From the NCBI GenBank assembly GCA_025558095.1, contig JAIVFI010000018.1, positions 558,001-622,000 on the forward strand: 64,000 nt of DNA, written 5' to 3'. Below are positions 25,678 through 43,232 of this stretch, in pieces. This stretch comes from Hyaloraphidium curvatum SAG 235-1 (lineage: Eukaryota > Fungi > Monoblepharomycota). Position numbers and translations under genes: made by a program. The notes below the pieces were generated by a model, which saw nothing but the letters and a program-made list of their open reading frames with translations, did not search any database and was not told where the DNA came from. The stretch's first letter is position 1. Each line of letters opens with the position of its first letter.

Positions 25678-26660
25678 CTTTCGCCCTCTCGATGCTCCAA
25701 ACACTCTACAATACGATCCATTACTCTCCGGTATCATCGCATAACTACCTATCTACTCCGCACTCGCACTCGCATACTTCATTCCGTCGATCGTTCATGT
25801 GCACCGCCAGCGGCAGCCCCGCCTGTTGCAGCGCCAGCCGCACGTCTGCGTCGGCGAGGCGGCGGGGGAGGGCTGGATGGGGGTAGGGGAAGGGGAGGAG
25901 GTGGGCTCGGCGGCGGAAGGGGCGGGAGCCGACGTGGGGGGAGGGGAGGCGGCGGAAGAGGTGGATGCGGAGGCGGGCTGGGCGGTGGAAGATGAGGGAG
26001 CGGAGGCGGTCGCGGTGGCGGGGGGAGGGGCCGAAGAGGAGGGGGAGGGGGCGGGCTGGGTGGGCGAAGGGGCGGGAGCAGAGGAGGGGGGGGAGGGGGA
26101 GGGGAAGAGCCGCAGATCGAGGCCGGGCCGGGGTCGCTGAACGTCGCCGCGAAAGTCTGGGCTGCATGAAAGGATGATCAGCCTCGAATGGCACCCAGCG
26201 GGCGACGGACGTACGGGGCAGTCCGGCCTTCTGGCGCTTTGGTTGTCGCGCGGGAAAGGTACGAGGGGAGCGGACGAGTGCCAAGTCAGCGGTGCGAACG
26301 GCCCAGCAGCCCTCCCGCGGGTGCCTACCGAGGTTCGTCAGGCAGAGCAGGTCCGTGGAAGCCAACGCGGCGAGCGCGGCGAGGAGCGCGGCGGCGAGGA
26401 GGGCGCGGGAGGGCATATCGGCGGCGGCGGGTCGGCGGGCGCGGGGCGCATGAAACGGCGGCGGGCGGCGGCGAGGCGCTGCGCGGAGGCAGACGGAGGG
26501 CGGGGGAGTGATTTAGAGGGGCGTGCAGTAGATGCCGGCTCAGGAGAATCACACTAGGTGAGGGGAGTTGAGTGAGGTGATGGTTCGCGGGCCGTCGATC
26601 GGACGAGGGCGCACCCAAAATCCTCGCCCGCCACCGAGCGCCGCCAAACAAAACAAACAT
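25678..26660. repeat. Inverted segmental duplication, partner of about 41140-42358 (5' flank, gene, 3' flank)
   Basis: Shared stretches such as CCCTCGTCCGATCGACGGCCCGCGA..CATCACCTCACTCAACTCCCCTCAC and GCGGAGTAGATAGGTAG..TGTAGAGT.TTTGGAGCATC on opposite strands. Confidence 0.9.
25795..26416 (-). pseudogene. Internally deleted inverted paralog of the CAP/SCP gene at 41384-42234
   Basis: Same signal peptide and LCLTNL, then QKAGLP jumps directly to the last intron; the first acceptor AG appears lost. The long P/S/T tail and QTCGWRCNRRGCRWRCT* are retained. Confidence 0.8.
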
Positions 26661-40794: not shown

Positions 40795-41383
40795 GTCGGC
40801 GCCCTTTGCAGCGCGCTCCGCCGGGCTAGAGGGGGGAATGCGGCCGCGGTGGGGCCGGCATGTGTGCTGCGTTGGCCGTTGCGGCGGGGCTGGCTCGCGC
40901 GCCCAAACTTGACCGCCGAATCAGCGGTCGCCGATCACCTCCGGATGACCTCGAAATCAAAGAGGGCTCCTGATCGTATTTGGATTGAGTTGGCAGCTGG
41001 TGGATCTGCCGCAATTGGAGGGCGGGGACGAGCTCCTGCACAGAGAATCGAAAGTCGCGCCGGAACGCCCTGCTTGCTTCTTGGACCGTGATCAGGCACA
41101 AAAATCTGTAGCAAAAGATCAAGCCAAAGGTCCGAATGGTCGTTGTTTTCAGTTGTTTGGGGGCGCCCGGTGGCGGGGGAGGATTGGGCGCGCCCTCGTC
41201 CGATCGACGGCCCGCGACCATCACCTCACTCAACTCCCCTCACAGGTGCGACTCTCCTGAGCCGGCATCTACTGCACGCCCCTCTAAATCACTCTTCCGT
41301 CTTATCTCTTGTCCCGCGCAGCGCCCCGCCGCCGCCCGCCGCCGTTTCATGCGCGCCGCGCCCGCCGCCCCGCCGACGCCGAA

Positions 41384-42234
41384 ATGCCCTCCCGCGCCCT
41401 CCTCGCCGCCGCGCTCCTCGCCGCGCTCGCCGCGCTGGCCTCCGCCGACCTGCTCTGCCTGACCAACCTCGGTGGGCCGCGACAGGTGGCCAGCTGGCCG
41501 TTCGCACCGCTGACTTGGCGATCCGCCGCTCCAATCGTTCCTCACCCGCGCAACCAGCAGAGCGCCAGAAAGCAGGCCTCGCCCCTCTCCATCTCTCCCC
41601 CGAGCTCCAGGCAGCCGCGCAGGTGCACTCGGACGACATGGCCGCGGGCGGGTTCATGTGTGCGTGCTCCGGGGACCGATCCGGTTCCGAATCTCATCCG
41701 AAATCTCTTTCCCCGCGCACAGCGCACACGGGATCGGACGGCAGCTCTCCCTGGGACCGCTTCGCCCGCTTCGGGTTTACCGACCTCCGCACGGGGGGCG
41801 AGAACGTCGCCGCGTAGGTCTCGGTCTCCTTGCTCCCCAGCTCCCCGATCAACTAACTTTCGGCGATCGCAGCGGCCAGACGACCGAGGAGCAGGTGATG
41901 GCCTCGTGGATGGGCTCGCCGGGGCACAGGGCCAACATCCTCAGCGCGGATTTCACCTTCTTTGGCGGGGCGAGGGCGGGGAACTACTGGAGTGCGTCCA
42001 TCACCCGCTGGGTGCCATCGAGGCTGATCATCCTTTCGTGCAGCCCAGACTTTCGCGGCGACGTTCAGCGACCCCGGCCCGGCCGCCCTCTGCGGTTCTT
42101 CCCCTCCGCCGCCCCCTCCTCCTCCCCCTGCCCCGGTGCCTGCTCCCTCCCCCTCCCCTCCCCCCGCGCCCTCGCCGACGCAGACCTGCGGCTGGCGCTG
42201 CAGGCGGTGGGGATGCCGCTGGCGGTGCTGGTGA
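41384..42234 (+). CDS. Secreted CAP/SCP (YkwD-like) protein with Pro-rich linker and cationic 4-Cys C-terminal peptide (5 exons)
   Basis: Signal peptide, LTNLAERQKAGL, AAQVHSDDMA, HTGSDGS, GENVAAG, WMGSPGHRANIL, NYWTQTF; last exon ends QTCGWRCRRWGCRWRCW* (TGA 42232-42234). Confidence 0.9.
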
Positions 42235-42608
42235 ACGATCGATCGATGGAACGATGCTGGAGCGCGGGCGTGCGGATGCGGAGTAGATAGGTAGCTTATG
42301 CGACGATACCAAGAGTTATGTGCGGATGTAGAGTATTTGGAGCATCAGAGGGCGAAACGACGAATGGGGTCCATTTCCCTCGAGCGACAAAGTCATGCGC
42401 TCGCAAACTCGGCCTCGACGTCCGGTGAAGATTGGCGCATTTTTCGGACCGAAAGACACAGCGGCGGAGGTTTGGTCGCAGGCGGGACTGGAGGATCTTC
42501 CACCCCAATCCCGCCACAGCCGCACTCGTCCACACAGCTCGTTACCGCACACGAATAAAAGGGTGCCATTCCGGACCCGTCCGCATTCCGCAACAAACAG
42601 AAACGACA

Positions 42609-43232
42609 ATGCGCTCCGCCCTCTCCGCCCTCGTGATTCTCTTCTCTCTTGCCGCCATCGGGGCCTCCGCTTCCGCGGTTCCCCGCGGGCCCTCCGAACC
42701 CGCCGCCGAAGCCGCTGCGCCTGCGACGGACCACCCCGAACTTTCGAAGCGGGCCTTCTACAACCCCAACGTGCCCCTGTTGCAGGGCAACGTGCCCACC
42801 GCGGCCGGCAACTTCCTCCTGGCGCCGTATGTCAAATCCGTCGTGTTCACGTCGGGCATTCTCGGGGTCTGCGAGAACGGCGGCATCTCGTTCAAGCCCA
42901 ACGTGAAGATCACCGTGTGCAACACGCAGAACTTGAACCCAGGCGCCGTGACTGGCCACATCGTGTTGCGAAAAGGCGACGCCAGCAAGAAGGTGATACA
43001 GACCCAGCCTTTGAACTCGAAGAGCGCCGCCGCGGCGCCGGCGGGGGCATGCCCGTGGGGCAAGGGCGTGGTTGTCGTTGCGGACGCTTGGTTCTGGTTC
43101 AACGAGATCCCTACGGCGGCGCCGATGGAGCTCGTCGCCGGGGTGAAGTTCAACAACAACCAGCAGGGCGTCGGGAGCTCCGTGGTAGTGTTGCCGCCGG
43201 GCAAGTGCGGACTGCAGACGGGGACCTTTTGA
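42609..43232 (+). CDS. Secreted pre-pro-protein of unknown function
   Basis: Signal peptide, acidic/Ala propeptide ending ELSKR (Kex2-like site), beta-rich mature region with four Cys. Confidence 0.75.
   Translation: MRSALSALVILFSLAAIGASASAVPRGPSEPAAEAAAPATDHPELSKRAFYNPNVPLLQGNVPTAAGNFLLAPYVKSVVFTSGILGVCENGGISFKPNVKITVCNTQNLNPGAVTGHIVLRKGDASKKVIQTQPLNSKSAAAAPAGACPWGKGVVVVADAWFWFNEIPTAAPMELVAGVKFNNNQQGVGSSVVVLPPGKCGLQTGTF

What the first reader, a model, noticed from the sequence alone, without database searches (positions are those of the whole stretch)
42044..42234. CAP/SCP protein ending in a tachyplesin/gomesin-like beta-hairpin peptide
Seen: after the CAP domain and a Pro-rich spacer, the protein ends CGWRCRRWGCRWRCW*, with C-x3-C-x4-C-x3-C spacing, five Arg, four Trp and no acidic residue. 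Known: tachyplesin ([17 protein letters not shown]) and gomesin have the same four-Cys spacing and cationic/aromatic composition, and plant PR-1 CAP proteins release C-terminal CAPE peptides. Inference: a secreted lipid/sterol-binding CAP domain carrying a membrane-active or polysaccharide-binding hairpin, possibly an undescribed fungal antimicrobial module arising by convergence.
Basis: partly seen in the sequence, partly recalled or inferred. Interest (0 to 1): 0.85.

Follow-up and report, generated by a model that had tools for sequence, protein, structure and literature searches.

The report
CAP protein with orphan Cys/Trp/Arg tail
A secreted bacterial-type CAP protein of the fungus Hyaloraphidium curvatum most likely ends in a 15-residue Arg/Trp peptide with four cysteines, spaced as in horseshoe-crab tachyplesin. 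The public gene model reads that stretch in another frame, the peptide has no relatives anywhere, and no RNA or protein data could be consulted, so it is a lead and not a discovery.

Summary
The sequence is as described. A five-exon gene (41384-42234, +) encodes a signal peptide, a CAP domain, one Cys, a polyPro linker and CGWRCRRWGCRWRCW followed by a stop (42187-42234).

The reading depends on the intron-4 acceptor. The deposited Hyaloraphidium curvatum model (P0001) uses an AG 5 nt downstream and reads a Leu/Ala/Val tail instead.
- It restores the family's conserved domain end, YWTQ.F.
- It restores a Cys shared with paralogue P0002.
- P0002's own model uses the homologous first AG.

I put about 0.7 on the tail being translated. 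RNA evidence could not be obtained.

Cautions:
- The tail consists only of xGx-codon residues, the usual off-frame shadow of G3-rich Leu/Ala coding in this 68% GC genome.
- It has no homologue in 1.8 billion representative proteins or in metagenomes.
- The only other copy, in a truncated duplicate 16 kb away, is no better conserved than its non-coding flanks.

In favour of a real module:
- AlphaFold2 predicts a hairpin that places the Cys residues as 1-4 and 2-3 pairs.
- P0002 has the same plan (CAP, polyPro, basic Cys tail).
- Other secreted enzymes of this genome end in polycationic tails.

Best reading, at about 0.4: a disulfide-stapled cationic hairpin that tethers the CAP domain to anionic surfaces. 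A released antimicrobial peptide is less likely.

The parts
41384..41471 (+). Exon 1: start codon, signal peptide (MPSRALLAAALLAALAALASA, predicted cut before DLLCLTNL) and the first Cys of the mature protein.
   Evidence: Identical to the N-terminus of database protein P0001. P0002 has the same DLLCLTNLERQKAGL directly after its own signal peptide. The cleavage site is inferred from the -3/-1 rule, not computed.
41561..41659 (+). Exon 2: CAP domain, first part. The acceptor is a CAGCAG tandem. 41561 gives NLERQKAGL, as in P0001 and P0002; 41558 would add one Ala.
   Evidence: PF00188 E 1.5e-5 on the exon alone; P0001 and P0002 sequences.
41723..41813 (+). Exon 3: CAP domain, middle part (SHTGSDGSSPWDRF...GENVAA).
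   Evidence: Intron 2 is 63 nt, in frame and free of stops, so 41143-41814 could be used as one reference.
41873..41991 (+). Exon 4: CAP domain, third part, ending ...GNYW. Donor GTGCGT.
   Evidence: PF00188 E 1.8e-5 on the exon alone.
41992..42043 (+). Intron 4 (52 nt): branch-like CTGAT 16 nt upstream of the first AG, and tandem acceptors GCAG|CCCAG|.
   Evidence: The homologous intron of P0002 has the same GCAG|CCCAG tandem and its deposited model uses the first AG.
42044..42102 (+). Start of the last exon: the end of the CAP domain, (T)QTFAATFSDPGPAALCGSS, with a conserved Cys at 42091-42093.
   Evidence: 14 of 16 homologues end the domain with YWTQ.FG or a close variant. 16 of 28 residues are identical to P0002, including the Cys. 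The YkwD profile reaches position 125/127 in P0002 but only 110/127 in the deposited P0001.
42103..42186 (+). PolyPro linker PPPPPPPPPAPVPAPSPSPPPAPSPTQT.
   Evidence: Its GC3 (0.55-0.75) matches the bona fide polyPro linker of P0002 (0.67), so the higher GC3 of the neighbouring frame is a by-product of xCx codons.
42187..42234 (+). The tail CGWRCRRWGCRWRCW plus TGA.
   Evidence: AlphaFold2 on the last 30 residues gives strands at 16-21 and 24-29, with mean pLDDT 86 over the last ten residues.
42231..42331 (+). 3' intron (42231-42313) and micro-exon SYVRM* (42314-42331), found only in the deposited model. If this intron is real and the first AG is used, the tail would end ...CRWRC, with TG|AG forming the stop.
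   Evidence: The branch site is weak, and the donor GT is absent from the duplicate copy.
25795..26416 (-). Truncated duplicate. It has the same promoter, exon 1 and intron 1. The CAP exons are deleted, leaving a 22-nt remnant (26236-26215) joined to the intron-4 donor. It has a long S/T/P/A or polyPro linker, and a tail CGWRCNRRGCRWRCT plus TGA (25842-25795).
   Evidence: The tail is in frame with the ATG only if the 22-nt mini-exon is spliced in. If exon 1 joins the last exon directly, the QTFAATF/polyPro frame is kept and the tail is lost.

Best explanation
The gene encodes a 195-residue secreted protein with this layout: signal peptide, a YkwD-type (bacterial-like) CAP domain closed by a Cys pair (Cys in DLLCLTNL with Cys in AALCGSS), a stiff polyPro spacer, and a 15-residue C-terminal peptide.

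In the oxidising secretory pathway the peptide folds into a two-disulfide beta-hairpin, with strands CGWRCR and GCRWRC and a turn at RW. One face then carries the two disulfides and a Trp-Trp cross-strand pair. The other face carries only Arg and Gly.

I propose that this amphipathic cationic hairpin stays attached to the protein and works as a tether. It would hold or concentrate the CAP domain on anionic surfaces, either the fungus's own wall or sheath or the envelopes of neighbouring bacteria. This is the same job that plain K/R/T/S tails appear to do on other secreted enzymes of this fungus.

Shown: the sequence, the exon structure by homology, the CAP family assignment, and the absence of homologues of the tail. 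Predicted only: the hairpin. Inferred: disulfide pairing, tethering and the target surface.
For: Frame:
- The first AG restores YWTQTF, where 14 of 16 homologues have YWTQ.FG or a close variant.
- The first 28 residues of the exon align 16/28 with paralogue P0002, including a Cys.
- P0002's deposited model uses the homologous first AG of an identical GCAG|CCCAG tandem.
- The YkwD profile match ends 15 positions early in the deposited P0001 but not in P0002.
The deposited frame gives three.
- The frame stays open from the acceptor to the tail, and the stop follows the tail directly in both copies.

Module:
- AlphaFold2 predicts a hairpin with C1/C4 and C2/C3 as cross-strand neighbours.
- All sequence criteria of the beta-hairpin peptide class are met.
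- P0002 has the same plan: CAP, Cys, polyPro, then a basic aromatic tail with two C-x3-C motifs, predicted as two hairpins and written in ordinary codons.
- Thaumatin-like and trypsin-like secreted proteins of the same contig end in long K/R/T/S tails within the same ORF as their catalytic domains.
- Both single-base substitutions in and next to the tail between the two copies are synonymous in the Cys frame and non-synonymous in the other frame.
- The two copies differ in the turn (RRWG against NRRG) but keep its length.

Attached and not released: no basic or CNYx-type cleavage site precedes the tail.
Against:
- The tail is made only of xGx codons. The overlapping frame, LRLALQAVGMPLAVLV, has 16/16 G-ending preferred codons. 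Each frame could therefore be the shadow of the other, and such shadows are common here.
- No homologue of the tail was found in two word-based searches, in 1.84 billion representatives, or in metagenome DNA. Conservation cannot be shown.
- The duplicate's tail is 84% identical, against 86-92% for the non-coding flanks. All four Cys surviving is roughly a one-in-four event under neutrality (my estimate).
- The duplicate may be a decaying copy whose tail is in frame only through a 22-nt mini-exon.
- AlphaFold2 on a single 30-mer is weak evidence, and Foldseek found nothing.
- The function of YkwD-type CAP domains is unknown.
Confidence: 0.4

Rival explanations
1. The tail is translated but is a young, neutral by-product. 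Slippage in the C-rich polyPro tract put translation into the off-frame shadow of a former Leu/Ala/Val-coding end, and the resulting Cys/Trp/Arg peptide has no selected function.
For: - The codons are exclusively xGx, and the overlapping frame shows perfect G3.
- 115 comparable shadow runs occur in 208 kb.
- There is no homologue anywhere.
- The linker has changed length and frame between the two copies.
- The tail is no better conserved than the flanks.
Against: - P0002 shows that a basic Cys-bearing tail after polyPro is a normal plan in this family.
- The alternation of Cys/Trp with Arg/Gly gives a cleanly two-faced hairpin.
- Both point substitutions are synonymous in this frame.
- Four unpaired Cys on a secreted protein would be costly if they did not pair.
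Confidence: 0.25
2. The deposited model is right. Intron 4 uses the second AG (exon from 42049), and the protein ends in a Ser/Pro-rich stretch plus a moderately hydrophobic LALQAVGMPLAVL(SYVRM) end, a GPI-signal-like or membrane tail as in yeast Pry3. The Cys/Trp/Arg peptide is then only an untranslated shadow.
For: - NCBI protein P0001.
- The 3' micro-exon is an odd thing for a purely ab initio predictor to add, so it may reflect transcript data.
- The hydrophobic frame has 16/16 preferred G-ending codons.
- GPI-anchored CAP proteins exist in fungi (ScPRY3, PMC10505147).
- In the duplicate, the second AG also leads to the matching frame.
Against: - It deletes the conserved YWTQ.F end of the domain and the Cys shared with P0002, leaving three Cys.
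- P0002's model uses the first AG of the same tandem.
- The first AG lies 16 nt after a CTGAT branch-like site and would normally be taken.
- High GC3 in this frame follows automatically from xCx and xGx codons in the neighbouring frame.
- In the duplicate this frame reads an Arg/His/Leu-rich string, its hydrophobic stretch is degraded (VRLALQQAGLPLAVHM), the 3' donor GT is lost, and a 10-nt indel follows.
Confidence: 0.2
3. The hairpin is cut from the CAP carrier and acts as a free tachyplesin-like antimicrobial peptide against bacteria or competing fungi.
For: - The tail meets the class criteria: length 15, charge +5, two Cys pairs, Arg only, and no His/Gln/Glu/Asp.
- It has the same Cys spacing as a tachyplesin-family peptide.
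- A hairpin is predicted.
- The CAP-less duplicate could encode signal peptide, linker and tail alone.
Against: - No dibasic or other recognisable processing site precedes the tail.
- There is no amidation signal.
- PolyPro linkers resist most proteases.
- Known families of this class come from five animal and plant phyla, with dedicated small precursors.
- No activity data exist.
Confidence: 0.12

Closest known systems
Tachyplesins, polyphemusins and gomesin (arthropod two-disulfide beta-hairpin peptides)
   Same: C-x3-C-x4-C-x3-C spacing (see QS18), 15-18 residues, strongly cationic with Arg over Lys, aromatic residues in the strands, and a predicted 1-4/2-3 hairpin.
   Different: - There is no detectable sequence relationship.
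- It is not a small dedicated precursor but the C-terminal end of a 195-residue CAP protein.
- It has no Gly-Lys-Arg amidation signal and no processing site.
- It is Trp-rich, where those peptides use Tyr/Phe/Val.
- It is fungal, and the review lists no fungal family.
Bacterial YkwD-type CAP domain proteins (TIGR02909; PF00188)
   Same: The globular domain matches at E 5e-28 and E 3.4e-21 and ends in YWTQ.F.
   Different: - The score is below the curated YkwD cut-off (97.5 against 171 bits).
- The gene is eukaryotic, with four introns and a eukaryotic signal peptide.
- It has an added Cys pair, a polyPro linker and the tail.
- The bacterial homologues seen here stop at ...FGA.
Paralogue P0002 of the same fungus (G000:C20:151798-152719)
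   Same: Signal peptide, DLLCLTNLERQKAGL start, the same CAP subtype, the same intron position and tandem acceptor, a Cys after the domain, a polyPro linker, and a basic aromatic C-terminal piece with two C-x3-C motifs.
   Different: Its tail is 75 residues with two repeats (YRWIINGKRCMLTCLP and YRYIVNGRRCRATCLP), predicted as two separate hairpins. It is written in ordinary mixed codons and is not alignable to the 15-mer.
Fungal surface CAP proteins (yeast Pry3, U. maydis PR-1La) and plant PR-1 with CAPE peptides
   Same: A secreted CAP domain joined through a low-complexity spacer to a C-terminal element that decides location or is released (PMC10505147).
   Different: Those are PR-1-type CAP domains with Ser/Thr-rich spacers, GPI signals, or a CNYx motif followed by PxGNxxxxxPY. 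None of these motifs is present here.

Membership tests
CAP superfamily (PF00188) | Significant match to the CAP profile above the gathering score | tested here: met
   Exons 2 and 4 alone score 26.2 and 26.0 bits (cut-off 21.1). The database protein for this gene gives E 3.4e-21 and 76.7 bits.
YkwD family (TIGR02909) | Score above the curated cut-off of 171 bits | tested here: not met
   97.5 bits, E 5.3e-28. This is the nearest subtype, but the protein is not a member by NCBI's threshold.
PR-1 / CAPE-releasing CAP proteins | [quoted passage not shown] | tested here: not met
   The domain ends GNYWTQTFAATFSDPGPAALCGSS. There is no CNY and no PxGN...PY in the last exon.
Beta-hairpin antimicrobial peptide class (criteria of PMC13001179) | Length 11-25 residues, net charge +1 to +8, two Cys pairs with at least 3 residues between partners, and Arg enriched over Lys | tested here: met
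   15 residues, +5, Cys at 1, 5, 10 and 14, five Arg and no Lys, and no His/Gln/Glu/Asp.
Beta-hairpin antimicrobial peptide class | A disulfide-cyclised beta-hairpin structure | tested here: inconclusive
   AlphaFold2 on a single sequence gives strands 16-21 and 24-29 of the 30-mer, with pLDDT 86 over the last ten residues. There is no experimental structure, and Foldseek gave no match.
Beta-hairpin antimicrobial peptide class | Exists as a free peptide with antimicrobial activity | not testable with these tools
   No processing site is visible before the tail. This needs peptidomics and activity assays.
Tachyplesin/polyphemusin family | Sequence homology, and a small precursor with a C-terminal amidation signal | tested here: not met
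   No hits in 1.84 billion representatives or in PDB sequences. The peptide ends Trp-stop, with no Gly-Lys-Arg. Only the Cys spacing is shared.
GPI-anchored fungal CAP proteins (Pry3-like) | A Ser/Thr-rich spacer and a C-terminal hydrophobic GPI signal | tested here: inconclusive
   Absent in the homology-supported frame. In the deposited frame there is a 13-residue moderately hydrophobic stretch near the end. No GPI predictor was available.

The most novel reading that the evidence does not exclude
A monoblepharid fungus has evolved, de novo and within its own lineage, a two-disulfide Arg/Trp beta-hairpin with tachyplesin's cysteine framework, possibly by reading the off-frame shadow of a G3-rich Leu/Ala-coding segment. 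It uses the hairpin as a membrane- or wall-active module fused to a bacterial-type CAP domain. This would be the first such module from the fungal kingdom, and a worked example of a bioactive peptide born from frame shadowing.
Probability: 0.2. Interest if true: 0.7.

Novelty: new variant of a known kind. Interest (0 to 1): 0.45.

Why it matters
If the tail is made and folds as predicted, there are three consequences:
- It would add a fungal entry to a peptide class known from fewer than 30 families in five animal and plant phyla (PMC13001179).
- It would show that class used as a fused targeting module, not as a free peptide.
- It would offer a very short Arg/Trp scaffold for testing.

It also bears on how GC-rich genomes can create Cys/Trp/Arg peptides simply by shifting frame. 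It fits a wider pattern in this fungus of cationic C-terminal tails on secreted enzymes, whose purpose is unknown.

On the practical side, it flags a probable error in the public gene model. That model cuts off the conserved end of the CAP domain.

Tried and rejected
- Homologues of the tail:
  - The search for homologous proteins with the 62-aa last exon and with the duplicate's 121-aa last exon scored nothing.
  - phmmer against 1.84 billion representatives gave 0 hits.
  - PDB sequence searches gave 0 hits.
  - A degenerate DNA pattern for CxWRC-x4-CxWRC in metagenomes gave more than 120 loci. All were off-frame repeats such as CCWRCC arrays, with stops nearby and no CAP or linker context.
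- Own genome:
  - The full double motif occurs only at the two loci.
  - Half motifs and the bare Cys spacing are at or below control counts.
  - No other CAP paralogue carries this tail.
  - P0002's tail is also unique.
- GC3 as a frame test was rejected as uninformative. PolyPro (xCx) and Cys/Trp/Arg/Gly (xGx) codons force high GC3 on the neighbouring frame, and P0002's genuine polyPro linker has GC3 of 0.67.
- The duplicate as proof of selection was rejected. Its tail identity of 84% is no higher than the flanks, and its reading frame is ambiguous.
- Foldseek with the 30-mer model found nothing.
- The look-up of encoding contigs had no record for P0001.
- The literature string search for the motif found nothing relevant.
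- An extra 48-nt intron inside the linker (42136-42183) was considered. It lacks a branch site and would not change the frame.
Exons were joined only inside local scripts to check frame and length. Searches used exon references, the stop-free stretch 41143-41814, and the database proteins P0001 and P0002.

Full report
**What is in the sequence**

The window is 64-72% GC. Around the finding lies a compact gene with short GT-AG introns. The exons are 41384-41471, 41561-41659 (a CAGCAG tandem acceptor; 41558 would add one Ala), 41723-41813, 41873-41991 and 42044-42234. Joined locally, only to check frame and length, they give 195 codons.

The protein layout is as follows:
- a signal peptide (MPSRALLAAALLAALAALASA);
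- a mature start DLLCLTNLERQKAGL;
- a CAP domain ending GNYWTQTFAATF;
- a Cys in AALCGSS;
- 28 residues of polyPro linker;
- the tail CGWRCRRWGCRWRCW, followed by TGA (tail at 42187-42231).

Exons 2 and 4 each hit PF00188 on their own.

Searches used single exons, the stop-free stretch 41143-41814 (intron 2 is 63 nt and in frame), and database proteins.

**Organism and the public model**

A region-restricted search with that stretch found the gene's own database entry, P0001. It is named 'CAP domain-containing protein [Hyaloraphidium curvatum]', is 198 aa long and sits on a 722,379-base contig, the length of the window's contig.

P0001 is identical to my model up to GNYW. It then reads NFRGDVQRPRPG...ADADLRLALQAVGMPLAVL and ends SYVRM. 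It therefore takes the second AG of the tandem GCAG|CCCAG| (exon from 42049) and adds a 3' intron (42231-42313) and a micro-exon.

- Among the 16 other proteins found, 14 end the CAP domain with YWTQ.FG or a close variant. The first AG gives NYWTQTFAATF and the second gives NYWNFRGDVQ.
- The start of the exon aligns with paralogue P0002 at 16 of 28 residues, including a Cys.
- P0002's gene has the same intron, the same phase and the same GCAG|CCCAG tandem, and its deposited model uses the first AG.
- The YkwD profile (TIGR02909) aligns to position 125/127 in P0002 but stops at 110/127 in P0001.
- The first AG lies 16 nt after a CTGAT branch-like site.
- From 42044 the frame runs without a stop to the tail.

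A gene finder would nevertheless prefer the other frame. Codons of the form xCx (Pro/Ala/Ser/Thr) and xGx (Cys/Trp/Arg/Gly) force G or C into the third position of the neighbouring frame. That makes the neighbouring frame look like ideal coding, with GC3 of 0.89-0.95. P0002's undoubted polyPro linker has GC3 of only 0.67, so GC3 cannot decide the matter.

**Is the tail more than chance?**

Taken as a random frame, no.
- All 15 codons are xGx.
- Runs of at least 12 residues drawn only from C/G/W/R/S occur 115 times in 208 kb of this genome's six-frame translation.
- CxWRC occurs 387 times against 469 for the reversed control.
- The TGC-only Cys spacing occurs 83 times against 123.
- The overlapping frame reads LRLALQAVGMPLAVLV with 16/16 G-ending codons, so each frame could be the shadow of the other.

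What is not common is the full double motif. It occurs only here and in one duplicate. It also sits at the exact end of a secreted protein's homology-supported frame.

**Relatives**

There are none.
- Two word-based searches returned nothing.
- phmmer over 1.84 billion representatives returned nothing.
- Two PDB sequence searches returned nothing.
- A degenerate DNA pattern in metagenomes returned only off-frame repeat arrays.

**The duplicate**

The only other copy lies 16 kb away, at 26416-25795 on the minus strand. It shares the promoter (92% identity), exon 1 (94%) and the last intron (92%). It has lost the CAP exons through a deletion that joins a 22-nt remnant of exon 2 to the intron-4 donor. 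Its linker is much longer, and it ends CGWRCNRRGCRWRCT followed by TGA.

Points in favour of the tail:
- The four Cys, both WR pairs and the stop position are kept.
- The turn changes from RRWG to NRRG without changing length.
- Both single-base substitutions in and next to the tail are synonymous in the Cys frame.

Points against:
- Tail identity (84%) is no higher than the 3' flank (86%).
- The tail is in frame with the ATG only through the 22-nt mini-exon.
- Direct splicing of exon 1 to the last exon would keep QTFAATF and the polyPro frame, and would lose the tail.

The duplicate is suggestive but proves nothing.

**Is it a plausible module?**

AlphaFold2 on the last 30 residues predicts strands CGWRCR and GCRWRC around an RW turn, with mean pLDDT 86 over the last ten residues. 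This places C1 opposite C4 and C2 opposite C3. By my reading of the register, one face carries Cys-Cys, Trp-Trp and Cys-Cys, and the other carries only Arg and Gly.

The peptide meets all sequence criteria that a 2026 review gives for disulfide-cyclised beta-hairpin antimicrobial peptides. That review lists natural families from Annelida, Mollusca, Arthropoda, Chordata and flowering plants only. A tachyplesin-family peptide quoted (QS18) has the same C-x3-C-x4-C-x3-C spacing.

**Context in the same fungus**

- P0002 has the same plan (CAP, Cys, polyPro), followed by a basic aromatic tail with two C-x3-C motifs. Its tail is written in ordinary codons and is predicted, at low confidence, as two hairpins.
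- Following two first-stage notes, I read a thaumatin-like and a trypsin-like gene on the same contig. Both end in long K/R/T/S tails within the same ORF as the catalytic domain.

Cationic C-terminal tails on secreted proteins are thus a recurring and robust feature of this secretome.

**What it most likely does**

The globular part is a YkwD-type, bacterial-like CAP domain. Its nearest non-self relatives are an oomycete protein and bacterial proteins. It is not a PR-1/Pry sterol binder, and it lacks the CNYx and PxGNxxxxxPY elements of CAPE release.

No processing site precedes the tail. I therefore favour a tethering role at about 0.4: a disulfide-stapled amphipathic cationic hairpin on a stiff polyPro stalk that holds the CAP domain on anionic surfaces.

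The rivals are:
- a translated but functionless frame-slip product (0.25);
- the deposited hydrophobic, GPI-like end, with the Cys peptide as a mere shadow (0.2);
- a released antimicrobial peptide (0.12).

**Verdict**

This is a real and correctly read sequence feature. It rests on a homology-supported correction of the public gene model. It is orphan, unconserved and unverified at RNA or protein level.

It is a new variant of known kinds: CAP proteins with C-terminal add-ons, and cationic two-disulfide hairpins. The interest is moderate. One RT-PCR and one mass spectrum would settle most of it.

Noticed in passing
window 41992-42049 and 42231-42331: The deposited NCBI model for this gene (P0001) appears mis-spliced. 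It takes the second AG of a GCAG|CCCAG tandem, which removes the conserved YWTQ.F end of the CAP domain, and it adds a 3' micro-exon SYVRM.
   Followed up: yes
G000:C20:151798-152719 (+), loci L013/L051: Paralogue P0002 has CAP plus a 43-residue polyPro linker plus two repeats, YRWIINGKRCMLTCLP and YRYIVNGRRCRATCLP. AlphaFold2 predicts two beta-hairpins with NG turns (pLDDT about 60). The tail has no other copy in the genome.
   Followed up: partly
L172 (G000:C18:623500-627500) and L173 (G000:C18:255500-259500): Thaumatin-like and trypsin-like secreted proteins end in 45-60 residues of K/R/T/S-rich polycationic tail, in one ORF with the catalytic domain. This suggests a secretome-wide habit of cationic C-terminal tails.
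   Followed up: partly
window 41561-42102; one search hit list: The CAP domain is of the bacterial YkwD type. The nearest non-self hits are a Lagenidium (oomycete) protein and bacterial or metagenomic proteins, and no other fungus appears. This may be an old horizontal acquisition that has since gained four introns.
   Followed up: no
window 42609-43229 (+): Directly downstream lies a 207-residue ORF with a signal peptide and an LSKR dibasic site. It has no Pfam match and is an uncharacterised secreted protein.
   Followed up: partly
L174 (G000:C33:473500-475800, minus strand): A secreted Cys-rich protein built from many CxxxCxxxxCxxxC units (for example CKPVCERPVCKVDC). It has the same Cys spacing as the tail but is neither cationic nor Trp-rich. 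It is a different, apparently genuine, repeat protein.
   Followed up: partly
L006, L007, L008 (G000 C24, C26, C22): Three identical copies of a dispersed repeat. In one frame it reads CNRRCSRWPCRWGAGC, which looks like another off-frame Cys/Trp/Arg shadow.
   Followed up: no
window 41555-41563: Intron 1 ends in a CAGCAG tandem (NAGNAG). The two acceptors differ by one Ala codon. P0001 and P0002 both correspond to the downstream one.
   Followed up: partly
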